Origin: Macrostomum lignano
Taxonomy: Eukaryota
DNA length: 64,000 nt
NCBI GenBank assembly: GCA_002269645.1
Contig: NIVC01002907.1
Location: 1 to 64,000 of the forward strand
Direction of reading: 5' to 3'
Below are positions 6,001-56,189 of this stretch, one piece after another (the stretch's first letter is position 1; the number at the start of each line of letters is the position of its first letter). A program made the position numbers and the translations under genes. The notes under the pieces are model-generated. The model was given only the letters and a program-made list of their open reading frames with translations. It did no database searches and was not told the origin of the DNA.

Positions 6001-9000
6001 CCAATCTACAAGAGACACAATGATCGAGCTACAAGAGACACAAGCCAATCTACAAGAGACACAATGATCAAGCAACCAGAGACACAAGCCAATTTACAAG
6101 AGACACAATGATCGAGCTACAAGAGACACAAGCCAATCTACAAGAGACACAATGATCGAGCTACAAGAGACACAAGCCAATCTACAAGAGACACAATGAT
6201 CGAGCTACAAGAGACACAAGCCAATCTACAAGAGACACAATGATCGAGCTACAAGAGACACAAGCCAATCTACAAGAGACACAATGATCAAGCAACCAGA
6301 GACACAAGTCAATCTACAAGAGACACAATGATCAAGCAACCAGAGACACAAGCCAATCTACAAAGACACAATGATCAAGCTACAAGAGACACAAGCCAAT
6401 CTACAAGAGACACAATGATCAAGCTACAAGAGACACAGGCCAATCTACAAGAGACACAATGACTAAGCAGCCAGAGACACACAGGCCAATCTTTAAGACA
6501 GACCTGTGAGCTATGGCCAAAGCCGATCCCAGACAGCAGCCGGGCACCGCAGGGAACTCCAATTCGGGCAGCGATTCCAACAATTCAACGATGGCGTCGC
6601 GACATTCGGCCACGGGTACTAGAAGACCTTCGGGCATTGGTAGGTCCGAATCGCCGTCCAGATCAGGCATGGCCAGCAGGCTGGGACGGGGTCCGTCCAG
6701 TTTGTACAGGTGCAGAACGCCATTGAAGGTGATGACGGCCAGCTGGGTGCGGGTGTCGCCTGGCAGACGGTCCAGACAGCGAAGCAGAGTCTGACTAACC
6801 GCAGTCAAGTAGGCAGTTGCCGACTTGGCAACGGCCGGGTCTGACGACAGAACCTGGGACACGTCCAGCGCCAGGATGTAGGTTGCGGGCGGCGGCGGCC
6901 GAACAGAATACTCCTGGGTGGCGATGAATTCCACTGTGCCGTTGCGAATCTCTGGCCGACGGCTCGGGTCGCCGTAGGTCTGCGGGGGCAATAGGTTTCC
7001 AGCGGAGCAGTTGTCTTAAAACTACTCGGGACCAAAATATGAGTTCGTACTGGTCTAGGTGATTCTCTAGAGGGGCTGGGGGTCTGCAAACTTTTTTTAC
7101 CTGAAGGGCCAGATAAAGAATTCAGCTCATGGCTGCGGGCCAGATGAGAGTACAAGGAGAGAATAAAATATAGACGAGAGACGAGAGAAGAGTAAGGGGA
7201 GAGAAGAGAGCTGAGAAGAGGCACAAACATTGAGCGGGCCGGATTGCTATTGTGAAGTTTCAAAGGACCCGAGGACAGATAAAGGGATAAAGGCTAGTTT
7301 TCTACCCATTCTAAATGTATAATGTGGCATCCCGCCGATCTCTGATTGGTGTAGAACGAGTGACAGAACTTGATCTAGGTACAATAGAACATTTATATAT
7401 AAATACCGTATATGCATAAAAGCGTTGATCTTAAAGCATTTAAGCGCGTATTATTTTTTTACAAGGTTTCTGCGAAAGTAAAAGTCTGCCTTACCTGGGA
7501 CATGGGATCATAAAGAAACTCTTCTGGCAAATCGTTGTCAAGAAAGCAGAGACTGCAGCGCCATCTCTGTTGGCTGGAGAAGCGCACGAAAGGATTAATA
7601 TAGGCCCGGCAATCTCGGCAGCGAACGATGACGTTGGCCTGAATGACTGCCAGGCTGCGCAGATCCTTAAACGGGTGCATTGCCAGGCCTAACGGTAGGC
7701 GAGATCGGCGCAACAACTCGGCAGTGGCCGGCACGGCGTTCATTGTGCAGGACATGACATCCGGATTGCAGTTGGCCTCAGCCGGGAACGAATGGCCCAA
7801 CGGCGGCGGAGCGACCGTCTCTATGGGCTCGGAGCCGTGCGTCCGCAGCAGCTGCCGGTCGCGCAGAAGATTCACTGAGTTTTCGCGATGCTGAGCGCTT
7901 GCAGTCGACCACTGCGGCTGCTGAAGCGTCGGCGGCGAAGTCATTTGTCGAGGCATCGGTCCAACGGGCAGCGGCGGCGTCGGCGCTACGAATGGCATTG
8001 GTGCTGGCGGCGCGGGGACAAATGAAGGGGGCGAAGGTGCGGCTGCAGATATTGGATGCATCGGCGGTTCTGGAGGTCCAATAGGCCGATGGCCAGGTGC
8101 CGTTGAGCTCGATGGCATCATAGGAGGTGGCGGAGGTCCAACAGGTTGATGGCCAGGTTGCGGAGGTCCAACAGGTTGATGGCCAGGTGGCGGAGGTCCA
8201 ACAGGTTGATGGCCAGGTGGCGGAGGTCCAACAGGTTGATGGCCAGGTGCCGTTGAGCTCGATGGCATCATAGAAGGTGGCAGAGGTCTAACAGGTTGAT
8301 GGCTAGGTGCCGTTGAGCTCGATGGCATCATAGGAGGTGGCGGACATCCAACAGGTTGATAGCCAGGTGCCGCTGAGCTCGATGGCATCATAGAAGGTGG
8401 CAGAGGTCTAACAGGTTGATGGCTAGGTGCCGTTGAGCTCGATGGCATCATAGGAGGTGGCGGACATCCAACAGGTTGATAGCCAGGTGCCGCTGAGCTC
8501 GATGGCATCATAGGAGGTGGCGGACATCCAACAGGTTGATAGTCAGGTGCCGTTGAGCTCGATGGCATCATAGGAGGTGGCAGAGGTCCAATAGGTTGAT
8601 AGCCAGGTGCTGCTGAGCTCGATGGCATCATTGAGGACTGTGGACCTACATATCGATGGTCAGGTGTTGCTGAGCTACCAATTCTCATCTGGTGTACCTG
8701 AGACGTCAAGTTTGCAGCTGCTGTCTGAGTTGAAGGCACTTCAAATGATGAAACTTGAGGTGGTTGTCTCAACTGAGAAGGGTGTGGAGCTGACACTGAG
8801 GAAGATGTTGATGGACAAGGCATTGAACTTTTTGGCAAATGACTTTGCAGAGGCAATGGAGGTGCAGCCATACCTGCTTGTGCAGATGAGGAATTCAGAC
8901 CATGCAAGTTCATCTGATTGGGCTGATTAGACAACATAGACCTCACAGGTGTTGGATGCAATAAAGAGCCATGAGGAAGTTGTAATGGAGGTGTAGAGGC

Positions 9001-9147: not shown

Positions 9148-10355
9148 TCCTCTTATATCTATAGTCTAGATTATATGAATAGCTTTCAGAAAAGTGAATT
9201 TATGTTTTTAATCTAGAGTATAAGTTGTTTCTTTAATCTATGAGATGAACAATTATTATTTCATAATTTAAAACCATTTATACTTGTGCTGTATAATTTG
9301 ATATATTTGCACTAGCCTAGGCCTAGGTTTCCCTGTTAGAATTTTTGCTCAAAATGCATAGACGAAAATTAGGATTTTAATATTTATAGTCCCTAATTAA
9401 AAGGGGATGGCAATAAACCTATTGGTTATTATAATTTTGAGCTACTTTACTATGTAAGGGCCTATCACACAATGCCATAATTGGTGTAATGTAGACTAAA
9501 GTACTATAAAACCTTGGTGAAATGCAATATAATAGAAAGGCAATAGACATATAAATGTCAGTTTTTTATCAAACTAAATTGTTTGTATAATGCAACATGC
9601 CATGCTACAGCCTAGCACCCTAGTGCAATAATCTTTAGCATGATATGACAAGTGACTAATTAAGCATATGAATAATTTATATAATACTAATCAATTAATC
9701 TATCTATGAAAAAGAGGATATAAAAATTATTTTCAACAAGAGTGATATTCACATTCACTTCAGTTTGTATTACAATTTTTTCTATAAAATATACCATGTT
9801 TATCATAAAGTAAATTTTTTTGCTTCAAATCTTAGATTAACTTAACCGATCAAATCAAAGGAGTTGTAAGAACCTTTCAGTTGAATAGTTTCGAGGTTCA
9901 AAAGGGTCTGTCAACTTAGGTTCATAAAGTGGAGCCCGACACCCAAGAAACATTATGTACATTGTACACAAATGATACGCCATTCTGCTCACAGTGACAC
10001 CAGAAAGATGGACTTAAGAAAAAAATTACAAAAATTGAACCTGGGATAAAAGAGAACAATCAAGGGGACAATTAGGGACTCCACCTGATAAGCTTAAGAC
10101 AGTTTACATGATGATGATAGTAATCATTATTCTTAGAAATTATACTTTTTAAACTAGAAAATATCTTTAGCAGCAACAGGTAAATTAGACTGAAATTATT
10201 ATTGACAAAACATTTTTTAAATACCTTAAGATTTTTTCAGATATTATATTTATTGATGGACAAACAAATAAAATTTTTGTTTTAGCCAACAATTTCAATT
10301 ATAAAACCGTTGGAAATTTACTACGATTTTTTTTGTGAAGGCCTAGTGAAGTGGG

Positions 10356-41340: not shown

Positions 41341-42700
41341 TCTATTTATTTACATTTTAATAACTAAAAAATTCGCAGCTATGACTACAGAAATCTTTGA
41401 GAAAAGCCATAGCCATAACAACAGTTGTTTTCCACAGGCATATTCATAGCTCCTAGTTGCCATAGTCATAATTTTAGTGAAATTTAAATTATATATTTCT
41501 ATGAGTACAATATTCAATCTATGTACTTGAGAATTTATATTTTGTCTGTAGGTATTTCCTAAGTATTCTGTTCATATTCTAAACTTCCTACCTTGCTGCT
41601 GATTTATTATTTAAGCTATATTTTTAACCTCACTGCTATGCCAATTATGGATTGGTTTAATCCTGTCTCTTTGTCAACCATTCTCATATGTTTGTTTCTA
41701 ACACCTGCTACCTTTAATCGTCACAAATTTTGTTGACAACAGTCTTCTCTTTGTAGTCTTCTTTGCGAGCAATCTTTGCAGATTTTACCGCAACTGACTT
41801 CCATAGTTTTTCCATCATTTTCACTTCTCTGCTCCCTTTGTGAACTGCATATCTGGCGATTGTTTCTAATCTACCTGTTTTTATTGCCGCAAATACACGC
41901 TCGTAGTTCACAGTATCTCTCCCACTATTTATGAATTGCTGCTGTGCATTGCGACCGGGCTCCCCCGCCGTCCCCCCTGCTCTGTAGCCAGCCAACCTCC
42001 GCCAGCTAGTCAGCCTATCACCGCTTAAGAGTCCCCCAAGGATTCCCCTCAACCCCCTGGGCAATAGCGAACACCCTCTGGTAATCGAGAGAAGAGTTCA
42101 AAGCAGGAGAGACACCGTTGAGTCAAAATACTTTTGAGCAGCATTTTATGGAAGCTGTCAAGTTCGGTGAGGCTTTTTTATGTTTCAATTGTCAATTCCT
42201 CTGCGTTAAAAAATGTATAAATATTCGCTAGAGGCTGTGGGCACCCCGGCGCGACATCATTCCACAACTCAGCGCTGAGGCCATGCTGCCCATTCCGCTG
42301 ACTCCTGAGCACATGCAAGCACGCCGATGCTTTACGCAGTACACACGCTTACACAGCGACCCTTACTTACTTTTCTAATCTTGAGATGTACACCCTCTGT
42401 GCCTTGGGGGTTGGCCCTCGTGGCTTTTGAATCCTCTGGAAAAATTTTGTGCGCGTTTCAGACGCTTTTATTGCTGAGCTGCTTTGCCCCCTAATTGCAG
42501 CATTTTCAGGTTATTGCAGGTTATCTCAACTCAGCGGTAAAGCGTCTGGCTCCTCGACCCGGGAAATTTATAAATCGCGCATGCGAGGACGAGGGCCGAC
42601 CACCAAGGCGCAGAGGGTGTACATGTCGGGGGCGCTGTACACCCTGTGTGCATGCTCAGTGATCAGCGTGCTGAAAGGGCCTGACATGACTGCTTGTTCT

Positions 42701-42995
42701 TTAATTAATAATTCAAAAATTGATTACACCTGCCCCGATTGGGCCAGATGTGCAACTAACAACTCAAACGCGGCTAGTACCGCGGCTGTTCATTCCAAAG
42801 ACTTTAAGGTCACCACGCGCACCCTCAATTACCCCAGCTAATGCTGGCGCCCATTTTACAGCTGGGTGAACTGAAGCAATGCAGAGTTGAATGTCTTGCT
42901 CAAGGACACAAATTGTTTCAGTGGGAATCGGGAATCGAACCCTCGACGTTCAAGTCGTGAGTCCGACGCTCTAACCACTAGGCCACCACAACCCC
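42701..42995 (-). mobile_element. tRNA-derived SINE, copy 5 (best Pol III boxes: TGGCCTAGTGG, GGTTCGATTCC)
   Basis: Reverse-complement match to copy 1. The head runs straight into the 18-bp array. Confidence 0.85.
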
Positions 42996-43874
42996 CTACT
43001 AGGCCACAGCCCCCTACTAGGCCACCACCCCCTACTAGGCCACCACCCTCCTACTATACCACAGCCCCCCTACTAGGCCACCACCCCCTACTAGGCCACC
43101 ACCCTCCTACTATACCACAGCCCTCCTACTAGGCCACAACCCACTACTAGGCCACAACCCCCTACTAGGCCACAACCCTCCTACTATACCACAGCCCTCC
43201 TACTAGGCCACAACCCTCCTACTATACCACAGCCCTCCTACTAGGCCACAACCCTCCTACTATACCACAGCCCTCCTACTAGGCCACAACCCTCCTACTA
43301 TACCACAGCCCTCCTACTAGGCCACAACCCCCTACTAGGCCACAAACCCCTACTAGGCCACAACCCCCTACTAGGCCACAACCCCCTAATAGGCCACAAA
43401 CCCCTACTAGGCCACAACCCCCTACTAGGCCACAAACCCCTACTAGGCCACAACCCCCTTACTAGGCCACAACCCCCTACTATACCACAGCCCTCCTACT
43501 AGGCCACAACCCTCCTACTATACCACAGCCCTCCTACTAGGCCACAACCCTCCTACTATACCACAGCCCTCCTACTAGGCCACAACCCCCTACTAGGCCA
43601 CAAACCCCTACTAGGCCACAACCCCCTTACTAGGCCACAGCCCCCTACTAGGCCACAACCCTCCTACTATACCACAGCCCTCCTACTAGGCCACAACCCC
43701 CTACTAGGCCACAACCCTCCTACTATACCACAGCCCTCCTACTAGGCCACAACCCTCCTACTATACCACAGCCCTCCTACTAGGCCACAACCCCCTACTA
43801 GGCCACAAACCCCTACTAGGCCACAACCCCCTTACTAGGCCACAGCCCCCTACTAGGCCACAACTCCCTACTAC
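42975..43874. repeat. 18-bp minisatellite (ctactaggccacaacccc), about 50 units, derived from the SINE 5' head
   Basis: Reverse complement ggggttgtggcctagtag is 17/18 identical to the 5' end of SINE copy 3. Confidence 0.9.
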
Positions 43875-43966
43875 TCGTACGCCTTGCCCAGGCTAAATAC
43901 AATAATTGTATTAGTAATTTGCCTCCCGTCACCGCAGCGGAACTGAAGCGCGAACAGCCCGACCCC

Positions 43967-46900
43967 ATGGATCACACAAATGAGCCACCAAGCAAACGAC
44001 AATACGCCGGTAGCGGAGCGCGCAATGAAATGCGCTTTTTAATCCCGTCTAAGGTAAATCACGTGATCAATACGCACTGATCTATTAGTGTAGAATAATG
44101 CATGTGCTCACTGTCTCATTCTAATTGCAGATGGCTGGCGTCATCATTGGCAAAGGCGGAGCCAACATCAAGCGTTTACGCGAAGAGGTGAGCACATCGA
44201 ATACTTTGCCATGTATATATTTTTAAAGTTAATGCTTAGTCAGCAGTTTGCTATTTATCTCACGCTTGTTTTATTTTCTATACTTAATAATACTATAGTA
44301 CCATTATTGTTTTACTAATTTCGTATTAAAAAGTCTACAAATATGCTAGTCGTACATTGTGCACTAATTCAATTTATAATACTGACAGTAATAGAACTAG
44401 ATTATTAACAGCTAGATCAAATATCCAAAGTTACCAGTCGAAAACTTACAAAATCCAAAAAGTACATAGAGAACCCGCTGTACAGATCCCACCCCCACTC
44501 TACTCTCTTTTCCCTTTCCAGTTCTCTGCCAAAGTGTCCGTACCCGATTCCAATGGCCCCGAACGGTACTGATGAAGTCGCTGATAATTTCCCTGTTATT
44601 GTTGCGTAATATTTGTATGTTTTTCAAACTGACGCGTTCCTGAAAATGTGCTTTTTTAATCTTCCTGATAAGACTGTTTATTTTAAATCCACATCATTCG
44701 TACTTTTTAATTGTCTTTTCAATAAAACCATTACTAATCCACAGTGCTTCGAATCTAAATTGGCATTTGACTGTCAGTGTCTCGGATGTAGATTGCCATT
44801 TGACTGTCAGTGTCTCGAATCTAAATTGGCATTTGACTGATCTAGATTGCCATTTGACTGTCAGTGTCTCGGATCTAGATTGCCATTTGACTGTCAGTGT
44901 CTCGGATCTAGATTGCCATTTGACTGTCAGTGTCTCGGATCTAGATTGCCATTTGACTGTCAGTGTCTCGGATCTAGATTGCCATTTGACTGTCAGTGTC
45001 TCGGATCTAGATTGTCATTTGACTGTCAGTGTCTCGGATGTAGATTGCCATTTGACTGTCAGTGTCTCGGATCTAGATTGCCATTTGACTGTCAGCGTCT
45101 CGGATGTAGATTGGCATTTGACTGTCAGTGTCTCGGATGTAGATTGGCATTTGACTGTCAGTGTCTCGGATGTAGATTGCCATTTGACTGTCAGTGTCTC
45201 GGATCTAGATTGCCATTTGACTGTCAGCGTCTCGGATGTAGATTGGCATTTGACTGTCAGTGTCTCTGATGTAGATTGGCCTTTGACTGTCAGTGTCTCG
45301 GATCTAGATTGGCATTTGACTGTCAGTGTCTCGGATCTAGATTGGCATTTGACTGTCAGTGTCTCGGATCTAGATTGGCATTTGACTGTCAGTGTATCTT
45401 TTAGAGGAAGTTAACATTTAGTATGTAGTAAATAAAAAGCTGCTTGTATGTTACTGTATTGTTGTTAGGCATGCTTTAAATAACCATTGACACATCTCAT
45501 TACTAACAGTAATTTAGATGGAATGACAGGTTTCTGATTAGTGTAAAGCTTTTGAAACCGAATTCAAGAATTTATGTTGCGTTATTGGTTGAGAGAAGGT
45601 TTCTGCTAAATCTTAATGGTCAGTTTTTCATCGGTTTAATTTGTTAATATCTGTTCTTGCTATTCTATTAACAGTTGAATTGCAAGGTTCCTCCAACACT
45701 CGGAACCTTCGCATTGGCACTCTGTCAAACAGATGACTTATTTTAATAGAGACGTGAAATAGAAATATTAACCACTTCTCTTTCACGTCACCTACATTCT
45801 TACGTCACGTTTCTTATTTCACGTCACGTCATTCTTACCTGCTGCATTTCTGAGCAGCATATGATGCTAGTATGGGTTTAGAAATACTACTATTTGAGAT
45901 GGTAAATAAGCCATGTTCTAGTAGAATTACAGTCGTGTCTGACTCAAGTTAGTTTGTGAACTGATTTGAATAGACTAAATGAGATTATTATCTCTATGTT
46001 CTTCATCCCCCAAGAGTAGAAATATTCCCCAGATTTCACTTTTGCCTATTTTTGTGCAAGATATTTCAGTCTCCAAATTCCACAACCCCAAGTTTCACAG
46101 TCCCAAATTTCACAACTTTAAATGATATTTCTAATTGGGGTTGCAAAAGTTTTGGGGTTTGGGGCAAATCAAGTTTGAGAATTAAAAAAATTAGGAGTCT
46201 ACAAAAGCATCGTCTTATCATACTACTTGTTCAACGACTCGTACTACTTACACTCTGTATAATTTTTTGGAAGTCCAGAAGGTCAAAAAGTTGTCAATGA
46301 AGCGCTAAAACAAACAAATAATTCTGTTCCTCTGATGTATCTTCTGCTTTCGAGTATCTAAGTGCCCGTTTTTTATTATTTAAAAACCCGCCATCCAACC
46401 CCGCAGAGTTCTGTGCTTGGAGGGCGAGCAGCCGATGCTGGAATCCCTGCTAGCCGACGTGCTCAACACTATGGTTGTCGAGGGCAACAGCGGCCGCGGC
46501 GACCGGGACGGCCTGGGCACCCAGCAGGGCGCGGTGACCAACACCGGGGATGTGGACCTGCGCCTGCTGGTGCACCAGTCACAGGCCGGCTGCATCATCG
46601 GCAAAGGCGGCAGCAAGATCAAGGAGCTGCGCGAGGAGTCCAAGCTGCGCGCCTTAAAAGTCTATTCGGTTGCTTGTCCAGTGTCCACCGATCGCGTCAT
46701 CCAGATGATCGGCGCCCCGGCCGAGCTTCTTGGCGCCGTCCGCATGGTGTCCGAGCTGCTGGAATCGGCGCCGCCTAAAGGCCAAATTGCCGGCTACGAT
46801 GCGCGCAATTTCGACGAATTTGGCGCCGAACAGTACGGCGGCTGGCCCGGCCGCTGGGGCGTCGGCCGGCAGGACCACTCCGTGGCCGCCAGCGCCGTCG

Positions 46901-47754
46901 GCATGCCGCCTGGCCCGCCCGGCTATCCGCCTGGCGGCGCTTTGGCCGCCGCGGCCGCCGCTGCTCACATGCGCGGAGGCGTGGCTCCCGCCGCCGCCGC
47001 AGGCTCGCGGACTCGGCCCGCCAGTTGGTGTACCCATGGCCGCTGGCGGCGCCGCCGGCGGGATGCCGTACGGTGCTCCGCGCGCTCCACGCGTGCCAGC
47101 CGGTCCGGAGGTGACCCAGCAGGTGTCAATCCCGGATTCACTGACCGGCTCCATCATGGGCCGGGGCGGCCAGCGCATCAAGCAGATCAGGATGGAATCT
47201 GGCGCCGATATTAAAATTGATCGGGGCGACCCCGGTCAGGATCGCATTATTACTATTAGGGCCCCCAGGAGCAGATACAGAATGCGCAGTACCTGCTGCA
47301 GATGTGGTGAGTATAGTTTGTATATTTGTTTTATGTTACACTCGCGATTCCTTCCCAGGTTTTGATCTGCCAGTTGGCCCTCAGTGTGGAAGACCAGTGA
47401 TTGTTGCCCAGACATTTTTTATAACATTATACTTCACAAAGTTTGACACTTTTGGACAACTCTCTCGGTCTTCCGTATTGATTGCCTTCGTTCGACATTT
47501 TACTCATATTGACTTGTGTGCGCGAGCTCAGTGTCTTTTTATGTGATTCCTCCACCCCACATCTGGGTCATTGTGCATGTGTAGACCGCTCTATCCCACA
47601 CCATAGTCCATCTGAAGACCGCTCTACCCCACACCCTAGTCCATCTGAAGACTGCTCTATCCCACAGCTTGTTATTTTAGTCAAGCAAATAACCTGAACA
47701 AAGTTCCCCCCTCGTTAACATTTCAGCGTGAAGAAGTACTCAGGACAGTACTAA
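43967..47754 (+). CDS. HNRNPK: hnRNP K-like triple-KH protein; exons 43967-44053, 44131-44187, 44522-44565, 46407-47306, 47727-47754; two 1-nt frameshifts (about 46990 and 47265)
   Basis: KH1: EMRFLIPSK|[19 protein letters not shown]|[15 protein letters not shown]|VL. KH2: [28 protein letters not shown]3: [36 protein letters not shown]|VKKYSG. Introns are GT-AG. Confidence 0.9.
44765..45395. repeat. 33-bp intronic minisatellite (tctagattgccatttgactgtcagtgtctcgga)
   Basis: Direct tandem repeats in hnRNP K intron 3. Confidence 0.9.
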
Positions 47755-48289
47755 TAATAATCGGCGCTAATGAAGAAGAACTATCTAAATTCGCCAGCAG
47801 CTTCGAAAATGCTTAGCAAACGGATTTGAACAGGTTTTTTGTATTCAAGTTAGACTGGACTGTGAGAATTCTAAAATAGCGATCAGTATCAAGTGTTTCT
47901 AGTGCAAACCGCGGGCTTGTTTTGTTATTATTAATAAATATGCCTAAGGCCCTTCACCCCCGGGCTTTAAGGCATGCATTTGTCACCTCTTTTCCCATCT
48001 ATAAATTGGCCTGCTTGTTTTTTATTCTGTTCGCAGGTTGGCTCCGGTGCGACGGTGTGCGTGTTTGAGGGTAAATTAATAATTAATTAGCTAATGAAAG
48101 TAAGTGGATTCGGTGCGATGCGGTGAAATTCGGGTCGCTGAATTTAATTGTCCATCTTTGAGAAAAAGGCACAGCTTTTTGTGTTACTGAATCGATCTCT
48201 ATTGTGTTGCAGTCTTCTTTCTTTCAACCTGACTAGCTTAGTGCAGTCATTTTGCATAGAACTGAGCCTAGAGCCTCATCCAGTATTAC

Positions 48290-48985
48290 CTTCATCAGGA
48301 TAGTGGCGCCTTAAGGTGGCCTTTATCAGGATAGTGGCGCCTGTAGGTGGCCTTTATCAGGATAGTGGCGCCTTTAGGTGGCCTTTATCAGGATAGTGGC
48401 GCCTGTAGGTGGCCTTTATCAGGATAGTGGTGCCTATAGGTGGCCTTTATCAGGATAGTGGCGCCTTTAGGTGGCCTTTATCAGGATAGTGGCGCCTGTA
48501 GGTGGCCTTTATCAGGATAGTGGTGCCTATAGGTGGCCTTTATCAGGATAGTGGCGCCTGTAGGTGGCCTTTATCAGGATAGTGGCGCCTTTAGGTGGCC
48601 TTTATCAGGATAGTGGCGCCTGTAGGTGGCCTTTATCAGGATAGTGGTGCCTATAGGTGGCCTTTATCAGTATAGTGGTGCCTGTAGGTGGCCTTTATCA
48701 GGATAGTGGTGCCTGTAGATTGCCTTTATCAGTATAGTGGTGCCTGTAGATTGCCTTTATCAGTATAGTGGTGCCTGTAGATGGCCTTTATCAGGATAGT
48801 GGTGCCTATAGGTGGCCTTTATCAGGATAGTGGTGCCTGTAGGTGGCCTTTATCAGGATAGTGGTGCCTGTAGGTGGCCTTTATCAGGATAGTGGTGCCT
48901 GTAGGTGGCCTTTATCAGGATAGTGGCGCCTGTAGATTGCCTTTATCAGGATAGTGGCGTCTCTAGATGACATCTATCAGGATAG
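48290..48985. repeat. 32-bp minisatellite (tttatcaggatagtggcgcctgtaggtggcc) followed by (gtgctgtatta)6; recurs at 49216-49740 and 50840-51600
   Basis: Direct tandem repeats within the ANAPC13 intron. Confidence 0.9.
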
Positions 48986-49746
48986 TGGAGCTTGTGTGCT
49001 GTATTAGTGCTGTATTAGTGCTGTATTAGTGCTGTATTAGTGCTGTATTAGTGCTGTATTGGTGCGCATCAAACAGACAAAAAACTTAGTTTCAGTGTCA
49101 ATGTTAGAATAACAACAGACCCTGGTGTATTTGAATTACTCAACCTTCCAGGCCGATCATCAATCAGTCCGGCCGGAGGGCCGCATGATCGACCTGGTCG
49201 ATGCTGATTGGCTGGTGCCTATAGGTGGCCTTTATCAGGATAGTGCGCCTTAGGTGGCCTTTTATCAGGATAGTGGCGCCTGTAGGTGGCCTTTATCAGG
49301 ATAGTGGTGCCTATAGGTGGCCTTTATCAGGATAGTGGCGCCTGTAGGTGCCTTTATCAGGATAGTGGCGCCTTAGGTGGCCTTTATCAGGATAGTGGCG
49401 CCTGTAGGTGGCCTTTATCAGGATAGTGGTGCCTATAGGTGGCCTTTATCAGTATAGTGGTTGCTGTAGGTGGCCTTTATCAGGATAGTGCGCTGTGATT
49501 GCCTTTATCAGTATAGTGGTGCCTGTAGATTGCCTTTATCAGTATAGTGGTGCCTGTAGATGGCCTTTATCAGGATAGTGGTGCCTATAGTGGCCTTTAT
49601 CAGGATAGTGTGCCTGTAGGGGCCTTTATCAGGATAGTGGTGCCTGTAGGTGGCCTTTATCAGGATAGTGGTGCCTGTAGGTGGCCTTTTATCAGGATAG
49701 TGGCGCCTGTAGATTGCCTTTATCAGGATAGTTGGCGTCTCTAGAT

Positions 49747-51754
49747 GGCGGACAGCGCATCAAGCAGATCAGGATGGAATCTGGCGCCGATATTAAAATT
49801 GGATCGGCTGCGACCCGGTCAGGATCGCTATTATTACTATTAGGGGCAGGGAGCAGATAGATATGCGCAGTACTGCTGCAGATGTGGTGGTATAGTTTGT
49901 ATATTTGTTTTATGTTACACTCGCGATTCTTCCCAGGTTTTGATCTGCCAGTTGGCCCTTCAGTGTGGAAGCAGTGATTGTTGCCCAGACATTTTATAAC
50001 ATTATACTTCACAAAGTTTGACACTTTGGACAACTCTCTCGGTCTTCGTATTGATTGCCTTCGTTCGACATTTTACTCTATTGATTGTGTGCGCGAGCTC
50101 AGTGTCTTTTTATGTGATTCCTCACCCCACATCTGGGTCATTGTGCATGTGTAGACCGCTCTATCCCACCATAGTCCATCTGAAGACCGCTCTACCCCAC
50201 ACCCTAGCATCTGAAGACTGCTCTATCCACAGCTTGTTATTTTATGTCAAGCAAATAACCTGAACAAAGTTCCCCTCGTTAACATTTCAGCGTGAAGAAG
50301 TACTCAGACAGTACTAATAATAATCGGCGCTAATGAAGAAGAACTATCTAAATTCGCAGCAGCTTCGAAAATGCTTAGCAACGGATTTGAACAGGTTTTT
50401 TGTATTCAAGTTAGATGGACTGTGAGATTCTAAATAGCGTCAGTATCAAGTGTTTTAGTGCAAACCGCGGCTTGTTTTGTTATTATTAATAAATATGCTA
50501 AGGCCTTCACCCCGGGCTTTAAGGCATGCATTTGTCACCTCTTTTCCCATCTATAAATTGGCCTGCTTGTTTTTTATTCTGTTCGCAGGTTGGCTCCGGT
50601 GCGACGGTGTGCGTGTTTGAGGGTAAATTAATAATTAATTAGCTAATGAAAGTAAGTGGATTCGGTGCGATGGTTGAAATTCGGGTCGCTGAATTTAATT
50701 GTCCATCTTGAGAAAAAGGCACAGCTTTTTGTGTTACTGAATCGATCTTATTTGTGTTGCAGTCTTCTTCTTTCAACCTGACTAGCTTAGTGCAGTCATT
50801 TTGCATAGAACTGAGCCTAGAGCCTCATCCAGTATTACCTTCATCAGGATAGTGGGCTTAAGGTGGCCTTTATCAGGATAGTGGCGCCTGTAGGTGGCCT
50901 TTATCAGGATAGTGGCGCCTTTAGGTGGCCTTTATAGGATAGTGGCGCCTGTAGGTGCCTTTATCAGGATAGTGGTGCTATAGGTGGCCTTTATCAGGAT
51001 AGTGGCGCCTTTAGGTGGCCTTTATCAGGATAGTGGGCGCTGTAGGTGGCCTTTATCAGGATAGTGTGCTATAGGTGGCCTTTATCAGGATAGTGGCGCC
51101 TGTAGGTGGCCTTTATCAGGATAGTGGCGCCTTTAGGTGGCCTTTATCAGGATAGTGGCGCCTGTAGGTGGCCTTTATCAGGATAGTGGTGCCTATAGGT
51201 GGCCTTTATCAGTATAGTGGTGCCTGTAGGTGGCCTTTATCAGGATAGTGGTCTGTAGATTGCCTTTATCAGTATAGTGGTGCCTGTAGATTGCCTTTAT
51301 CAGTATAGTGGTGCCTGTAGATGGCCTTTATCAGGATAGTGGTGCCTATAGGTGGCCTTTATCAGGATAGTGGTGCTGTAGGTGGCCTTTATCAGGATAG
51401 TGGTGCCTGTAGGTGGCCTTTATCAGGATAGTGGTGCCTGTAGGTGGCCTTTATCAGGATAGTGGCGCCTGTAGATTGCCTTTATCAGGATAGTGGCGTC
51501 TCTAGATGACATCTATCAGGATAGTGGAGCTTGTGTGCTGTATTAGTGCTGTATTAGTGCTGTATTAGTGCTGTATTAGTGCTGTATTAGTGCTGTATTG
51601 GTGCGCATCAAACAGACAAAAAACTTAGTTTCAGTGTCAATGTTAGAATAACAACAGACCCTGGTGTATTTGAATTACTCAACCTTCCAGGCCGATCATC
51701 AATCAGTCCGGCCGGAGGGCCGCATGATCGACCTGGTCGATGCTGATTGGCTGG
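49747..51754 (+). repeat. Second copy of 47165-49215 (hnRNP K 3' end to ANAPC13 exon 2 start), rich in 1-bp deletions
   Basis: Collinear near-identity with numerous single-base losses. Confidence 0.85.
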
Positions 51755-51942
51755 ACGATCGGCTGCCCCGCGAGTCCGTGCCCGTGCTGCCTAGCGAGCT
51801 GCCGGATTTGGATCCGGACTCGCAGGACGAGCAGGAGGCGGCCGACGATAACAAGTGGACAGAGCTGCAGCTGATGCGCATTAGGCGGATTGCAGAGCAG
51901 CAGGTTCGCGGCCACACTGCCGGGCCTGCGCCGCCAAGCTAG
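50646..51942 (+). CDS. ANAPC13: Anaphase-promoting complex subunit 13-like, about 85 aa; exons 50646-50651 (ATG AAA; duplicate at 48094-48099) and 51691-51942
   Basis: EGRMIDLVDADWLDDRLPRESVPVLPSELPDLDPD...KWTELQL parallels APC13 DGRILDLIDDAWREDKLPYEDV...KWTDLAL. The micro first coding exon is inferred from ATG AAA|GTAAGT. Confidence 0.8.
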
Positions 51943-51989
51943 AGTTCTTTCGCTTTTAGAGTGCTTTTGCTAAACTTTATCTTATCAGA

Positions 51990-53178
51990 CCACTCCCCCC
52001 GCTAGCAGTTAGTGACTGCAATATCATCAGGCCACTCCCCCCGCTAGCAGTTGGTGACTGCATATCATCAGGCCACTCCCCCCGCTAGCAGTTAGTGACT
52101 GCAATATCATCAGGCCACTCCCCCCGCTAGCAGTTGGTGACTGCAATATCATCAGGGCCACTCCCCCCACTAGCAGTTGGTGACTGCAATATCATCAGGG
52201 CTCCCCCGCTAGCAGTTGGTGACTGCAATATCATCAGGGCCACTCCCCCCACTAGCAGTTGGTGACTGCAATATCATCAGGGCCACTCCCCCCGCTAGCA
52301 GTTGGTGACTGCAATATCATCAGGGCCACTCCCCCCGCTAGCAGTTGGTGACTGCAATATCATCAGGCCACTCCCCCCGCTAGCAGTTAGTGACTGCAAT
52401 ATCATCAGGCCACTCCCCCCGCTAGCAGTTGGTGACTGCAATATCATCAGGGCCACTCCCCCCACTAGCAGTTGGTGACTGCAATATCATCAGGGCCACT
52501 CCCCCCGCTAGCAGTTAGTGACTGCAATATCATCAGGGCCACTCCCCCCGCTAGCAGTTAGTGACTGCAATATCATCAGGGCCACTCCCCCCGCTAGCAG
52601 TTAGTGACTGCAATATCATCAGGGCACTCCCCCACTAGCAGTTAGTGACTGCAATATCATCAGGGCCACTCCCCCCGCTAGCAGTTAGTGACTGCAATAT
52701 CATCAGGCCACTCCCCCCACTAGCAGTTACTGACTGCAATATCATCAGGCCACTCCTCCCACTAGCAGTTACTGACTGCAATATCATCAGGGCCACTCCC
52801 CCCGCTAGCAGTTAGTGACTGCAATATCATCAGGGCCACTCCCCCCACTAGCAGTTAGTGACTGCAATATCGTCAGGGCCACTCCCCCCACTAGCAGTTA
52901 GTGACTGCAATATCATCAGGGCCACTCCCCCACTAGCAGTTAGTGACTGCAATATCATCAGGGCCACTCCCCCCACTAGCAGTTAGTGACTGCAATATCG
53001 TCAGGGCCACTCCCCCCACTAGCAGTTAGTGACTGCAATATCGTCAGGGCCACTCCCCCCGCTAGCAGTTACTGACTGCAATATCGTCAGGGCCACTCCC
53101 CCCACTAGCAGTTAGTGACTGCAATATCATCAGGGCCACTCCCCCCACTAGCAGTTAGTGACTGCAATATCATCAAGT
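51990..53178. repeat. 41-43-bp minisatellite (gggccactccccccgctagcagttagtgactgcaatatcatca)
   Basis: Direct tandem repeats. Confidence 0.9.
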
Positions 53179-53739
53179 TATGGTGCGAATACACGAATTC
53201 TCTGGCCCTGACGCAAACAGTTGAGACCCCAAAACCGAAAGCAATCAAAGTACGTATTTGATTCCTTGAATTCATTCGTTTTTCTGTATTTTCGTGCTTG
53301 TTGCTTATGATGAAATGCTGCCAAATTTAGTTACCAAAAATACAAAATATTACTTCTTATGACTTCATAATTTGTGTAAAAAGTCTGGCACCTGTGTTCA
53401 AAGGTTTAAAAATTAAATAAACGCTCTGATAAAATTTCACTGTTTGTTAGTATTTAAAATCCAATAAACATCCATTGTAAGTAGACGAGAAGTGGCCGGT
53501 TGTAGATTGTCGATGCCGAAGGCTAATAGTTGCCGCGCTGTCGGATAAGTGGCCGAAATTTGGAAATTGGCCACTTGTCCGAACGCCTGCACGCGTTGGC
53601 GTGCAGACGGAAACAACTTGGTATTGTTTGCATTAGGCTGCTTGGGTCGGCTCGGCAGTCAGTTGTCGTAGACACGGAGAGACGCGATTGGAGGGCCAAC
53701 AGATTGACTCATGTTCTAAAATGAATTAAAATGCTTCGA

Positions 53740-54885
53740 TTCCCATTGGATTCAGTATCCTTACCCAAGTCTCACCCATTGGATTCAGTATCCTTACCCA
53801 AGTCTCACCCATTGTATTCAGTATCCTTACCCAAGTCTCACCCATTGGATTCAGTATCCTTACCCAAGTCTCACCCATTGTATTCAGTATCCTTACCAAG
53901 TCTCACCCATTGTATTCAGTATCCTTACCAAGTCTCACCCATTGTATTCAGTATCCTTACCAAGTCTCACCCATTGTATTCAGTATCCTTACCCAAGTCT
54001 CACCCATTGTATTCAGTATCCTTACCCAAGTCTCACCCATTGTATTCAGTATCCTTACCCAAGTCTCACCCATTGGATTCAGTATCCTTACCCAAGTCTC
54101 ACCCATTGTATTCAGTATCCTTACCCAAGTCTCACCCATTGTATTCAGTATCCTTACCCAAGTCTCACCCATTGGATTCAGTATCCTTACCCAAGTCTCA
54201 CCCACTAGATTCAGTATCCTTACCCAAGTCTCACCCACTAGATTCGGTATCCTTACCCAAGTCTCACCCACTAGATTCGGTATCCTTACCCAAGTCTCAC
54301 CCATTGTATTCAGTATCCTTACCCAAGTCTCACCCATTGTATTCAGTATCCTTACCCAAGTCTCACCCATTGGATTCAGTATCCTTACCCAAGTCTCACC
54401 CATTGTATTCAGTATCCTTACCCAAGTCTCACCCATTGTATTCAGTATCCTTACCCAAGTCTCACCCATTGGATTCAGTATCCTTACCCAAGTCTCACCC
54501 ACTAGATTCAGTATCCTTACCCAAGTCTCACCCACTAGATTCGGTATCCTTACCCAAGTCTCACCCACTAGATTCGGTATCCTTACCCAAGTCTCACCCA
54601 CTAGATTCGGTATCCTTACCCAAGTCTCACCCACTAGATTCAGTATCCTTACCCAAGTCTCACCCATTGTATTCAGTATCCTTACCCAAGTCTCACCCAC
54701 TAGATTCAGTATCCTTACCCAAGTCTCACCCATTGTATTCAGTATCCTTACCCAAGTCTCACCCACTAGATTCGGTATCCTTACCCAAGTCTCACCCATT
54801 GGATTCAGTATCCTTACCCAAGTCTCACCCATTGGATTCAGTATCCTTACCCAAGTCTCACCCACTAGATTCAGTATCCTTGGCC
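53740..54885. repeat. 33-bp minisatellite (cccattgtattcagtatccttacccaagtctca)
   Basis: Direct tandem repeats; the long ORFs here are repeat artefacts. Confidence 0.9.
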
Positions 54886-56189
54886 AAGTGAATCCAATCT
54901 TCCTCCATTCTCAGTGTGGATCACTGCTATGGTCAAGAGTTCGAGACTGCGCGTGCCTTGGATGTGAAGCCACTGGATCTATAATCTAGGCCCTCAAGCT
55001 CCCAGGCGACTGTAGTATCTTAGGAAAATAACCTGGCGTCCTTTAGTATCACCACCTAATTTTAAACTAACATTCGTCATTAAGGTTCTTCATAACCATA
55101 CAGTTCCTTGGTATCATTATCGGTTTGTGTCCCCTTGCCGTCACTTTCTGATTCTTAGATTGCTTTTGGCTTTTCGCTTTGGCTTGGATTTGGATTTTGG
55201 CTTCAAGCAGGGAATCCAACCTTGGGACTTGTGCGTAGTGCCTGGCGACCCGCAAGGTGCAAAGTATGCACACCGCCTTGCCATGAGAAAGTCGGAGTAG
55301 ATGTACACATGTGAGCAGAGGCCAATATAGCATGAGCATAGCGAATAGTTTCTTCGCTGACTGTCGTCCAAAGTTGCTCGACATTAATATTGGCGCACTT
55401 AACTAACTCAATAGATGCACTTTTTTATTTACTTCTGACTTTATCAACTGTATCAATCAACTCGTCTGAAGATCTGAACTGCTCATAACTAACCCCAGAA
55501 AAGTGCGAAATGAATAACAAAACAATTAATGGGCTTCCAAATACAAAACCAGACTAAATGAATAGATTGTCTCGCCGCCTGATTTTTCCGGTATACCGGC
55601 CAACCCCTGTGTTCATAAATTTAAATTTAGCGCCCAGCCATCCGTTGTTGGCATGGTTACGGGTCATGCCTGTCCATTGAAGCGTATAGCCATAGTTAGA
55701 GAAGTCTCTTTTTACCGGAAATGCTTTATCGCCCGTCTCATTGGGTGGCCGCTCCCGGGCGCCCGCGGCCGGCCATTCCTGGCCAGATGCAGAGAGCAAT
55801 AGTATAGGCCGTCGCCATCCATCACAGCTGTCACTAAATGCGTCTGCACTGGTCAGGGTCGCCTAAGTCCGAAGCTGGCCTGGCCACCGGGATTGGCGGG
55901 TCGCCAGGAAGCTGCCCGAGTTGGAATGAATGGCGATGTCACCTATTGCACCCCGGGGCGTCTGGCCGCAATCTGGGTTTTCGGCCGGGGTTGCATGGCG
56001 CCGCATTGGAGGGGGGAGCTATAATTGATGCCAACTCGAGGCCAACCGTGTGTCCTTTGGTGTATCCTTTTTCAACTGCGTTCTGCCAGCTCGCGTATTC
56101 GCTGCGACCGACACTCCGGTCCCTAGTTACAGCAACAAAAATAAAAGTGCAACAATGGCTACTATTCAATTCCAGTTTTCCATCTAAGC

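What the first reader, a model, noticed from the sequence alone, without database searches (positions are those of the whole stretch)
47727..51942. Candidate operon: hnRNP K followed by ANAPC13 at C. elegans-like spacing
Seen: hnRNP K stop at 47754, AATAAA at 47933-47938, a U-rich tract, then a strong 3' splice site (ttttttattctgttcgcag, AG 48035-36) about 100 nt later with no upstream donor. A micro exon ATG AAA|GTAAGT splices in frame to the APC13-like exon. There is little room for a promoter. Known: nematode operons use about 100-nt intercistronic spacers resolved by 3'-end cleavage plus SL trans-splicing, and flatworms have SL trans-splicing. Inference: a dicistronic unit coupling an RNA-binding protein to an APC/C subunit, relevant to proliferating cells.
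Basis: partly seen in the sequence, partly recalled or inferred. Interest (0 to 1): 0.7.

Follow-up and report, generated by a model that had tools for sequence, protein, structure and literature searches.

The report
Flatworm hnRNP K–APC13 operon candidate

Summary
The window is the first 64 kb of contig NIVC01002907.1 of the M. lignano Mlig_3_7 assembly.

Three things change the picture:
- Window 49213-51754 is an error-rich second copy of 47165-49215 plus a minisatellite piece. Two paralogous loci (L001, L002) lack it, so it is probably an assembly artefact.
- The deposited APC13 model is a Met-less CDS starting exactly at 51691. The species' spliced leader (SL) ends in ATG and is in frame there, giving MADHQSV.
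- In L002 the CAG acceptor at that junction reads ATG, matching the SL's last bases. The hnRNP K 5' acceptor shows the same kind of change in the window, while all 38 ordinary splice-site copies are intact. The assembly was polished with RNA-seq.

So SL addition is best placed at 51691, not 48037. That is about 1 kb from the poly(A) signal, or about 0.55 kb after subtracting repeats. This still meets the published M. lignano operon criterion, but not the claimed 100-nt spacing or "no room for a promoter". Co-transcription is unproven. The adjacency is absent in Schistosoma and Echinococcus. This is a known kind of arrangement and of low interest.

The parts
41942..42166 (+). hnRNP K exon 1 (5' UTR plus ATG at 42148). 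The SL trans-splice acceptor is at 41941|41942.
   Evidence: L001 and L002 read ttgcAG|CTGTGC. The junction is homologous to SL|CTGTGCCC in the relative's transcripts L005-L008. The window reads ttgcTG, where -2 is the SL's base.
43938..47306 (+). hnRNP K exons 2-5: 43938-44053, 44131-44187, 44522-44565 and 46407-47306, with minisatellite-rich introns. In the window, exon 5 carries +C at 46987 and -G at 47259.
   Evidence: Splice sites mapped from the intact 389-aa model P0124 of L002. Frameshifts sit in homopolymer runs. The deposited window model P0007 (BOX15_Mlig028343g6) is truncated.
47727..47754 (+). hnRNP K last coding exon, stop at 47752-47754.
   Evidence: Translates to VKKYSGQY*, identical to the C-terminus of P0124 and P0002.
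47933..47938 (+). AATAAA, probable poly(A) signal of hnRNP K.
   Evidence: It is the only canonical signal between the stop and the APC13 exon and is identical in all loci. Its use has not been verified.
47971..47982 (+). Conserved element GGCATGCATTTG, between the poly(A) signal and the 63-nt exon.
   Evidence: 12/12 match to the 3' regions of hnRNP K transcripts of two relatives, which share 18/18 (TGGCATGCATTTGACCCC) with each other. Function unknown.
48000..48006 (+). TATAAAT, about 30 nt upstream of 48037. A possible promoter element under the rival explanation.
   Evidence: It is the only TATAAA between 46 and 54 kb apart from its duplicate at 50552.
48037..48099 (+).
   Evidence: Strong, rare splice-signal pair, intact in all 4 copies. 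It is absent from the deposited APC13 model. An SL joined here opens an 18-codon upstream ORF.
48289..49065 (.). 31-nt minisatellite plus an 11-nt microsatellite, inside the spacer/outron.
   Evidence: TRF. The homologous array in L002 is 9351-9771.
49213..51754 (+). Duplicated block: a copy of minisatellite 48428-48969, then a copy of 47165-49215. Probable assembly artefact.
   Evidence: 96.7% identity, differing mostly by 1-2-bp deletions in the second copy (47 deleted columns, 4 inserted). It shares copy 1's haplotype-specific bases and is absent from L001 and L002.
51691..51942 (+). APC13 coding exon, stop at 51940-51942. The preferred SL trans-splice acceptor is at 51690|51691 (ttccag|GCC).
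   Evidence: Pfam Apc13p at 22.2 bits against a cutoff of 22, and HMMER relatives named APC13. The deposited CDS P0001 begins at 51691 without Met. The SL ATG is in frame. L002 reads cATG|GCC.
51984..53468 (+). APC13 3' region: 42-43-nt minisatellite at 51984-53175, then AATAAA at 53416 and 53463.
   Evidence: The position of the 3' end is inferred only.

Best explanation
This is a Macrostomum lignano locus in which an hnRNP K gene (first gene, SL trans-spliced at 41942, 3' end after AATAAA 47933) is followed on the same strand by a single-coding-exon APC13 gene.

The APC13 mRNA is made mainly by adding the 35-nt spliced leader directly onto 51691. The leader's terminal AUG then serves as the start codon (M-ADHQSVRPEGRMIDL...).

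The two genes are probably transcribed as one unit. That unit would be resolved by cleavage and polyadenylation after 47933 and SL trans-splicing about 1 kb downstream. In the two clean paralogous loci the distance is about 0.55 kb once the 31-nt minisatellite is subtracted.

The 63-nt exon at 48037-48099 is at most an alternative 5' exon that uses the same acceptor in cis. The 2.5 kb block at 49213-51754 is an assembly artefact.

Shown: gene identities, signals, the structure of the three loci, and the SL-type base changes. Inferred: the SL junction at 51691 and the poly(A) site. Not shown: co-transcription.
For: 1. The window is NIVC01002907.1 of Mlig_3_7. [quoted passage not shown]
2. The deposited APC13 CDS (P0001) lacks Met and starts at the first base after the acceptor in all three loci. 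An in-frame TAA lies 13 codons upstream in the intron, so a 5'-partial ORF 'ADHQ...' needs a transcript that starts exactly there. The annotation pipeline sets such boundaries from SL-read peaks.
3. The SL ends in ...TTGCATG, and joined at 51691 it gives an 84-aa ORF from the SL AUG. SL-donated initiator AUGs are documented in flatworms (Cheng 2006). Orthologues begin MSDA.../MDSE..., and P0001's first residue aligns with their Met.
4. L002 reads cATG|GCC where the other copies read cCAG|GCC, which are the SL's -2 and -3 bases. The window's hnRNP K 5' acceptor reads TG where L001 and L002 read AG, again the SL's -2 base. All 30 hnRNP K cis splice-site copies and all 8 copies of the 63-nt exon's sites are intact.
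5. The assembly was polished with RNA-seq. A micro-exon overhang (..AAA) could not put a T at -2.
6. TTCCAG fits the published trans-acceptor motif [T/C]TNCAG. TCGCAG at 48031-36 does not.
7. Relatives' transcripts carry the SL on hnRNP K (L005-L008) and an SL-like leader on APC13 (L015).
8. The spacer in L002 is about 1.0 kb, of which 421 nt is minisatellite. That is under the 1 kb repeat-adjusted criterion.
9. The hnRNP K locus tags are Mlig028343 g1, g3 and g6. This suggests other genes share the same transcriptional-unit prefix.
Against: - I saw no M. lignano RNA read or transcript directly. The SL junction is inferred from the annotation and from base changes in the assembly.
- The L002 and window base changes could be real mutations in redundant copies of a neopolyploid genome.
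- Simple end-to-end read overhangs would be expected to alter positions -5 and -7 as well, and those are unchanged.
- The 63-nt exon has unusually strong and rare splice signals. A strong donor upstream of 51691 should favour cis-splicing.
- The roughly 1 kb spacer, with a TATAAAT at 48000, leaves room for an independent promoter.
- The poly(A) site is unverified. The conserved element at 47971 lies inside the 3' UTR in relatives, which hints that hnRNP K transcripts may extend further.
- The pairing is not conserved in Schistosoma, in Echinococcus, or beside the second M. lignano hnRNP K paralogue.
Confidence: 0.5

Rival explanations
1. The SL is added at 48037, about 80-100 nt after the hnRNP K poly(A) site. 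The 63-nt exon then supplies ATG AAA and is cis-spliced to 51691, giving MKADHQ...
For: - The acceptor and GTAAGT donor pair is strong and rare and is intact in all four copies.
- The ATG is in frame.
- About 100 nt is the modal intergenic distance of M. lignano operons.
- There is no strong donor between the hnRNP K last exon and 48036.
- Flatworm acceptors are often shared between cis- and trans-splicing, so this form may coexist as a minor isoform.
Against: - The deposited model lacks the MK codons and starts at 51691.
- The base change in L002 is SL-type (T at -2), not micro-exon-type.
- TCGCAG does not fit the published trans-acceptor motif.
- An SL joined at 48037 opens an 18-codon upstream ORF that ends 6 nt before the ATG.
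- The exon is not recognisably conserved in the relatives' contigs.
Confidence: 0.15
2. There is no operon. APC13 has its own promoter in the roughly 1 kb spacer, for example the TATAAAT at 48000. Its primary transcript is either SL trans-spliced at 51691 as a monocistronic outron, or starts near 48030 and cis-splices the 63-nt exon to 51691.
For: - TATAAAT lies about 30 nt upstream of 48037.
- The spacer is long relative to the 100-nt mode.
- About 60% of SL trans-spliced M. lignano genes are not in operons.
- The adjacency is not conserved in other flatworms. In other flatworm-like transcripts APC13 is paired with a different downstream ORF.
Against: - The repeat-adjusted distance of about 0.55 kb falls on the operon side of the published bimodal distribution.
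- The locus-tag numbering g1, g3, g6 suggests that two genes share each transcriptional unit.
- A single TATAAA hexamer is weak evidence for a promoter.
Confidence: 0.3
3. The acceptor at 48036 is cis-spliced to an hnRNP K donor (for example 47306), which makes the 63-nt exon an alternative 3' exon of hnRNP K rather than part of APC13.
For: Joining 47306 to 48037 keeps an open frame that ends at a TAA inside the exon (read directly). The relatives' hnRNP K contigs run through the homologous region.
Against: There is no supporting protein isoform among M. lignano hnRNP K entries: P0002, P0124 and P0125 all use the ...LLQM(CVKKYSGQY) ending. The donor at 48100 would be left unexplained.
Confidence: 0.05

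Closest known systems
Macrostomum lignano operons, as defined by Ustyantsev & Berezikov 2021 (PMC8629364) on the Mlig_3_7 annotation (Wudarski et al. 2017, PMC5730564)
   Same: Same genome. The genes are adjacent on the same strand, the downstream gene is SL trans-spliced, and the repeat-adjusted distance is under 1 kb. A minisatellite inflates the spacer, as that paper describes. A two-gene unit is the commonest size.
   Different: This pair is not described individually in any paper I could search. The distance (about 0.55 kb adjusted) is well above the 100-bp mode. Co-transcription has not been shown here.
Caenorhabditis elegans SL2-type operons with intercistronic regions of about 100 nt
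   Same: The same logic: 3'-end cleavage of the upstream mRNA, plus SL trans-splicing of the downstream one, from a single pre-mRNA.
   Different: M. lignano has one SL and no specialised SL2. The best-supported acceptor is about 1 kb from the poly(A) signal, not about 100 nt. No separate U-rich element was identified beyond the acceptor's own pyrimidine tract.
SL-donated initiator AUG in flatworms (Cheng et al. 2006 J Biol Chem 281:733, cited in PMC9851317 and PMC12582326)
   Same: The SL ends in AUG. The junction at 51691 is in frame. The exon has no AUG of its own before residue 13, so the full-length conserved N-terminus needs the SL's AUG.
   Different: It was demonstrated experimentally in Schistosoma mansoni. 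Here it is inferred from frame, annotation and alignment only. In the relative L015 the APC13 mRNA has its own AUG 22 nt after the leader.
Polycistrons of parasitic flatworms (Schistosoma, Echinococcus; PMC12582326)
   Same: SL-resolved gene pairs, with acceptor sites shared between cis- and trans-splicing.
   Different: In those genomes hnRNP K is not followed by APC13 within 10 kb. The pair also fails the 300-bp criterion of PMC12582326 if the acceptor is 51691.

Membership tests
SL-resolved operon (M. lignano definition, PMC8629364) | Adjacent genes on the same strand with no opposite-strand gene between them | tested here: met
   hnRNP K (41942-47955) then APC13 (51691-51942), both on the + strand, in the window, L001 and L002.
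SL-resolved operon (M. lignano definition, PMC8629364) | Repeat-adjusted intergenic distance under 1 kb | tested here: met
   In L002 the poly(A) signal is near 8995 and the acceptor at 10001, about 1.0 kb apart. Subtracting the 421-nt minisatellite leaves about 0.55 kb. In the window the raw distance is 3.7 kb, but only because of the duplicated block.
SL-resolved operon (M. lignano definition, PMC8629364) | Downstream gene's mRNA carries the spliced leader | tested here: inconclusive
   The indirect support is strong: a Met-less deposited CDS starting at the acceptor, an in-frame SL AUG, an SL-type base change in L002, and an SL-like leader on APC13 mRNA of a relative. I saw no M. lignano SL-bearing read.
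SL-resolved operon (general) | Both genes transcribed from one promoter as a polycistronic pre-mRNA | not testable with these tools
   This needs RNA-seq continuity, RT-PCR or 5'-end data. The only hint is the shared Mlig028343 prefix with gene numbers g1, g3 and g6.
C. elegans-type operon | About 100-nt intercistronic region between the 3'-end signal and the trans-splice site | tested here: inconclusive
   An acceptor lies 98 nt after the AATAAA (48036), but the evidence for SL use points to 51691 instead.
C. elegans-type operon | Specialised SL2-class leader for downstream genes | tested here: not met
   The literature reports a single SL in M. lignano (PMC8629364 and PMC12582326). The window contains no SL RNA gene.
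APC13 / Apc13p (PF05839) | Match to the family profile over the conserved N-terminal region | tested here: met
   Pfam 22.2 bits against a cutoff of 22, E = 1.6e-4. phmmer hits at 4e-9 and weaker include proteins named APC13 in Octopus and spiders. The profile search returned 337 hits, nearly all carrying PF05839.
hnRNP K | Three KH domains, with best matches to named hnRNP K proteins | tested here: met
   KH_1 occurs three times in the L002 model. The C-terminal KH scores E = 9.5e-20. Top hits are named hnRNP K in M. lignano, Schistosoma, Echinococcus and arthropods.
SL-donated start codon (slORF) | SL 3'-terminal AUG in frame with the ORF at the junction, with no upstream in-exon AUG | tested here: met
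   SL plus 51691 gives an 84-aa ORF. The first in-exon AUG is codon 13. Translation from the SL AUG cannot be tested here.

The most novel reading that the evidence does not exclude
The CATG in L002 and the TG in the window are real genomic variants rather than polishing errors. In one of three redundant copies of a neopolyploid genome, a CA-to-AT change would then have destroyed the trans-splice acceptor while installing a genome-encoded AUG exactly where the SL's AUG lands. That would be a snapshot of a gene switching from SL-dependent to SL-independent translation initiation, possibly through conversion templated by cDNA of the SL-spliced mRNA.
Probability: 0.1. Interest if true: 0.5.

Novelty: new member of a known kind. 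Interest (0 to 1): 0.2.

Why it matters
Biologically, little. SL-resolved operons cover about 15% of M. lignano genes and are already annotated genome-wide, so this is one more two-gene example, and it is not conserved in other flatworms. The practical lessons are more useful.

- A strong acceptor close to a poly(A) signal is not enough to place a trans-splice site. In flatworms the SL's own AUG can be the start codon, so ATG-based gene models can invent small 5' exons.
- Because Mlig_3_7 was polished with RNA-seq, some trans-splice acceptors in the assembly may carry SL-derived bases in place of the true AG. That matters for anyone who copies promoter or acceptor regions from this assembly into transgenes, or who trains splice-site models on it.
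- The window contains a probable 2.5 kb false duplication and homopolymer frameshifts that truncate the deposited hnRNP K model.

Tried and rejected
- **M. lignano APC13 transcripts.** The exhaustive HMMER scan and the profile search found no closer Macrostomum APC13. The SL junction could therefore not be read from M. lignano RNA.
- **Published tables.** ANAPC13 and Mlig028343 are absent from the stored parts of the supplements. The HNRNPK rows belong to the other paralogue.
- **Conservation among the three M. lignano loci.** They are too similar, with 0-2 differences per sub-region, to show selective constraint on the spacer or the 63-nt exon.
- **Global alignment of the spacer to relatives' 3' regions.** Uninformative apart from two short islands.
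- **Longer SL fragments in the held M. lignano DNA, as a genome-wide sign of polishing footprints.** 7-mers occur at the chance level and nothing longer was meaningful.
- **Rfam on the window.** No match. No SL sequence in the window.
- **The second ORF that follows APC13 in L013-L015.** It is not in the window, L001 or L002 and has no Pfam match. I recalled a resemblance to a polyprenyl synthase subunit but could not verify it, so I make no such claim.


Full report
**Origin of the window.** The APC13 exon's product (P0001) is carried by three contigs of GCA_002269645.1. One fetched locus, L003, is identical to window 41691-61942, and its record range shows that the window is the first 64 kb of NIVC01002907.1. 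NIVC01000000 is the Macrostomum lignano Mlig_3_7 assembly (PMC5730564).

**The observation.**
- hnRNP K last coding exon at 47727-47754 (VKKYSGQY*).
- AATAAA at 47933-47938.
- Acceptor AG at 48035-36.
- ATG AAA|GTAAGT at 48094-48105.
- An APC13-like exon at 51691-51942, in frame with the micro-exon.

The acceptor-donor pair around the 63-nt exon is unusual. A pyrimidine-rich CAG acceptor followed within 150 nt by GT[AG]AGT occurs three times on the + strand of the window, two of them being this exon and its duplicate, and never on the - strand. AATAAA at 47933 is the only canonical poly(A) signal between the hnRNP K stop and the APC13 exon.

**Gene identities.**
- The upstream gene is hnRNP K. 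It has three KH_1 domains. It is 97% identical to a UniRef entry named hnRNP K of M. lignano, and its orthologues are named hnRNP K in Schistosoma, Echinococcus and arthropods.
- The deposited models are BOX15_Mlig028343g6 (window, truncated), g1 (L001, truncated) and g3 (L002, intact, 389 aa).
- The window copy is broken by +C at 46987 and -G at 47259. L001 is broken by a missing C near 46906. All three lie in homopolymer runs, as expected from residual long-read errors.
- The downstream gene is APC13. Pfam Apc13p scores 22.2 bits against a cutoff of 22. An exhaustive phmmer scan returned 30 relatives, several named APC13. A profile search returned 337 hits, nearly all carrying PF05839.

- Window 47165-49215 recurs at 49747-51754 (96.7% identity). 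Between the two copies lies a copy of part of the 31-nt minisatellite (49213-49747, matching 48428-48969).
- The second copy differs from the first mostly by 1-2-bp deletions: 47 deleted columns, 4 inserted and 33 mismatches, with many deletions in homopolymers.
- It shares copy 1's haplotype-specific substitutions relative to L001 and L002.
- L001 and L002 each have a single copy of the whole arrangement: last exon, AATAAA, acceptor, micro-exon, an intron of about 0.9 kb, then the APC13 exon.
- I read the block at 49213-51754 as a false duplication built from poorly corrected reads. I could not examine the reads themselves.

**Where the spliced leader joins APC13.** Five lines of evidence point to 51691 rather than 48037.
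1. *The deposited model.* P0001 is 'ADHQSV...', with no Met, and starts at the first base after ...ttccag| in all three loci. An in-frame TAA lies 13 codons upstream in the intron. The 63-nt exon would have supplied an ATG. A 5'-partial ORF starting at that base therefore requires a transcript whose 5' end is exactly 51691. The Mlig_3_7 annotation sets such boundaries from peaks of SL-trimmed reads.
2. *Reading frame.* The M. lignano SL is CGGTCTCTTACTGCGAAGACTCAATTTATTGCATG. Joined at 51691, its terminal ATG is in frame and gives MADHQSVRPEGRMIDL..., 84 aa. All flatworm SLs end in AUG, and its use as an initiator is documented for Schistosoma (Cheng et al. 2006, cited in PMC9851317 and PMC12582326). 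In an alignment with the closest relatives (MSDA..., MDSE...), P0001's first residue falls on their Met.
3. *Acceptor motif.* TTCCAG at 51685-90 fits the published trans-acceptor motif [T/C]TNCAG. TCGCAG at 48031-36 does not.
4. *SL-type base changes.* At the APC13 junction, L002 reads ...ccttcATG|GCC where the window (both copies) and L001 read ...ccttcCAG|GCC. Positions -2 and -3 carry the SL's bases, and further upstream the sequence is normal intron.
   - The same kind of change occurs at the hnRNP K 5' acceptor. L001 and L002 read ttgcAG|CTGTGC, at exactly the point where transcripts of a close relative join SL to CTGTGC (L005-L008). The window reads ttgcTG, where -2 is again the SL's base.
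   - As a control, all ten cis splice sites of hnRNP K are intact in all three loci (30 of 30), and the two sites of the 63-nt exon are intact in all four copies (8 of 8).
   - Mlig_3_7 was polished with Pilon using Illumina DNA and also RNA-seq mapped by STAR. SL-bearing reads overhanging a trans-splice junction can therefore overwrite the last intron bases.
   - A micro-exon overhang (...AAA) could not put a T at -2.
   - Whether these changes are polishing artefacts or real variants, they imply RNA in which the SL abuts 51691 and 41942.
   - One caveat: simple end-to-end overhangs should also have altered -5 and -7, which are unchanged.
5. *Relatives.* A transcript contig of a relative with a near-identical leader (...GCAATTTATTGCATG) shows that APC13 mRNA is SL trans-spliced there. 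That mRNA has its own ATG 22 nt after the leader (L015).

**Is it an operon?**
- SL-resolved operons are established for this genome. [quoted passage not shown] Most operons have two genes. The repeat-adjusted intergenic mode is about 100 bp, and the working threshold is 1 kb (PMC8629364).
- In the clean locus L002 the poly(A) signal is about 1.0 kb from the 51691-equivalent acceptor. Of that, 421 nt is the 31-nt minisatellite, which leaves about 0.55 kb. The pair therefore meets that paper's criterion.
- hnRNP K would be the first gene. The nearest annotated upstream gene is 7.5 kb away on the opposite strand.
- The hnRNP K locus tags share the prefix Mlig028343 with gene numbers g1, g3 and g6. 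Under the authors' naming scheme this suggests other genes derive from the same transcriptional units. Three loci with two genes each would fit, but I could not see the APC13 tags.
- I could not test co-transcription.
- The spacer is long enough for a promoter and contains TATAAAT at 48000-48006.
- The 63-nt exon remains unexplained if it is unused. Because flatworm acceptors are often shared between cis- and trans-splicing, a minor isoform (SL at 48037, then 48099 spliced to 51691) is quite possible.

**Comparative context.**
- APC13 is not within 10 kb downstream of hnRNP K in Schistosoma curassoni or in two Echinococcus genomes. It is also absent beside the second M. lignano hnRNP K paralogue. 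The pairing is therefore not an old flatworm feature.
- The neoblast-enriched HNRNPK entries in Grudniewska et al. 2018 (Mlig013850.g1, Mlig033523.g2) belong to that other paralogue. A link between this locus and proliferating cells is not documented.
- In three transcript contigs from other flatworm-like organisms, the APC13 ORF is followed after 8-42 nt by a second, unrelated ORF (L013-L015). That ORF is not in this window.

**Verdict.**
This is a plausible two-gene SL-resolved unit of a kind already catalogued in this species.
- My estimates are about 0.85 that the SL joins at 51691, and about 0.6 that the two genes are co-transcribed given that. That gives about 0.5 for the whole best explanation.
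- Interest is low. The most useful by-products are technical: SL-derived bases at acceptors in an RNA-seq-polished assembly, a probable false duplication, and frameshifted gene models.

Noticed in passing
window 41940; L002 9998-9999: At two SL trans-splice acceptors, one of the three paralogous loci has the AG replaced by the spliced leader's own terminal bases (TG, ATG). All 38 cis splice-site copies checked are intact. The assembly was polished with RNA-seq, so these look like SL 'footprints' and may occur genome-wide in Mlig_3_7.
   Followed up: partly
window 49213-51754: A 2.5 kb block duplicates 48428-48969 and 47165-49215, differing mainly by 1-2-bp deletions. It is absent from the two paralogous loci. 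It is a probable assembly artefact that creates a truncated APC13 exon (49152-49215) upstream of it and a second micro-exon.
   Followed up: partly
window 47971-47982; L004 1572-1589; L005 1583-1600: The element GGCATGCATTTG lies between the hnRNP K poly(A) signal and the 63-nt exon. It is conserved in the 3' regions of hnRNP K transcripts of two relatives, which share 18/18 nt (TGGCATGCATTTGACCCC), while the surrounding sequence has diverged. It contains a GCAUG core. Its function is unknown.
   Followed up: partly
window 46987 and 47259; L001 exon 5: Single-base homopolymer indels frameshift hnRNP K exon 5 in the window (+C, -G) and in L001 (-C). Two of the three deposited models are therefore truncated (P0007 at 347 aa, P0123 at 315 aa), and only L002 is intact (P0124 at 389 aa).
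   Followed up: yes
L013 276-1030; L014 178-932; L015 47-709: In transcript contigs of other flatworm-like organisms the APC13 ORF is followed after only 8-42 nt by a second conserved ORF that has no Pfam match. This suggests a different, very tight dicistronic pairing of APC13. L015 carries an SL-like leader at its 5' end.
   Followed up: partly
window 53961-54887: A deposited 309-aa 'protein' is simply an open frame running through a 33-nt minisatellite (array 53742-54889), so it is almost certainly a spurious gene model.
   Followed up: partly
window 43000-43870, 44742-45400, 47569-47666, 48289-49065, 51984-53175: Introns, the spacer and the 3' UTRs of this locus are packed with minisatellites of 31-43-nt units. 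Their copy numbers differ between the three paralogous loci, and they account for most of the length differences between those loci.
   Followed up: no
L012 (NIVC01000415.1): A second M. lignano hnRNP K paralogue (P0008, BOX15_Mlig013850g1, 65% identity) is the one listed as SL trans-spliced and neoblast-enriched in Grudniewska et al. 2018. It has no APC13 nearby.
   Followed up: yes
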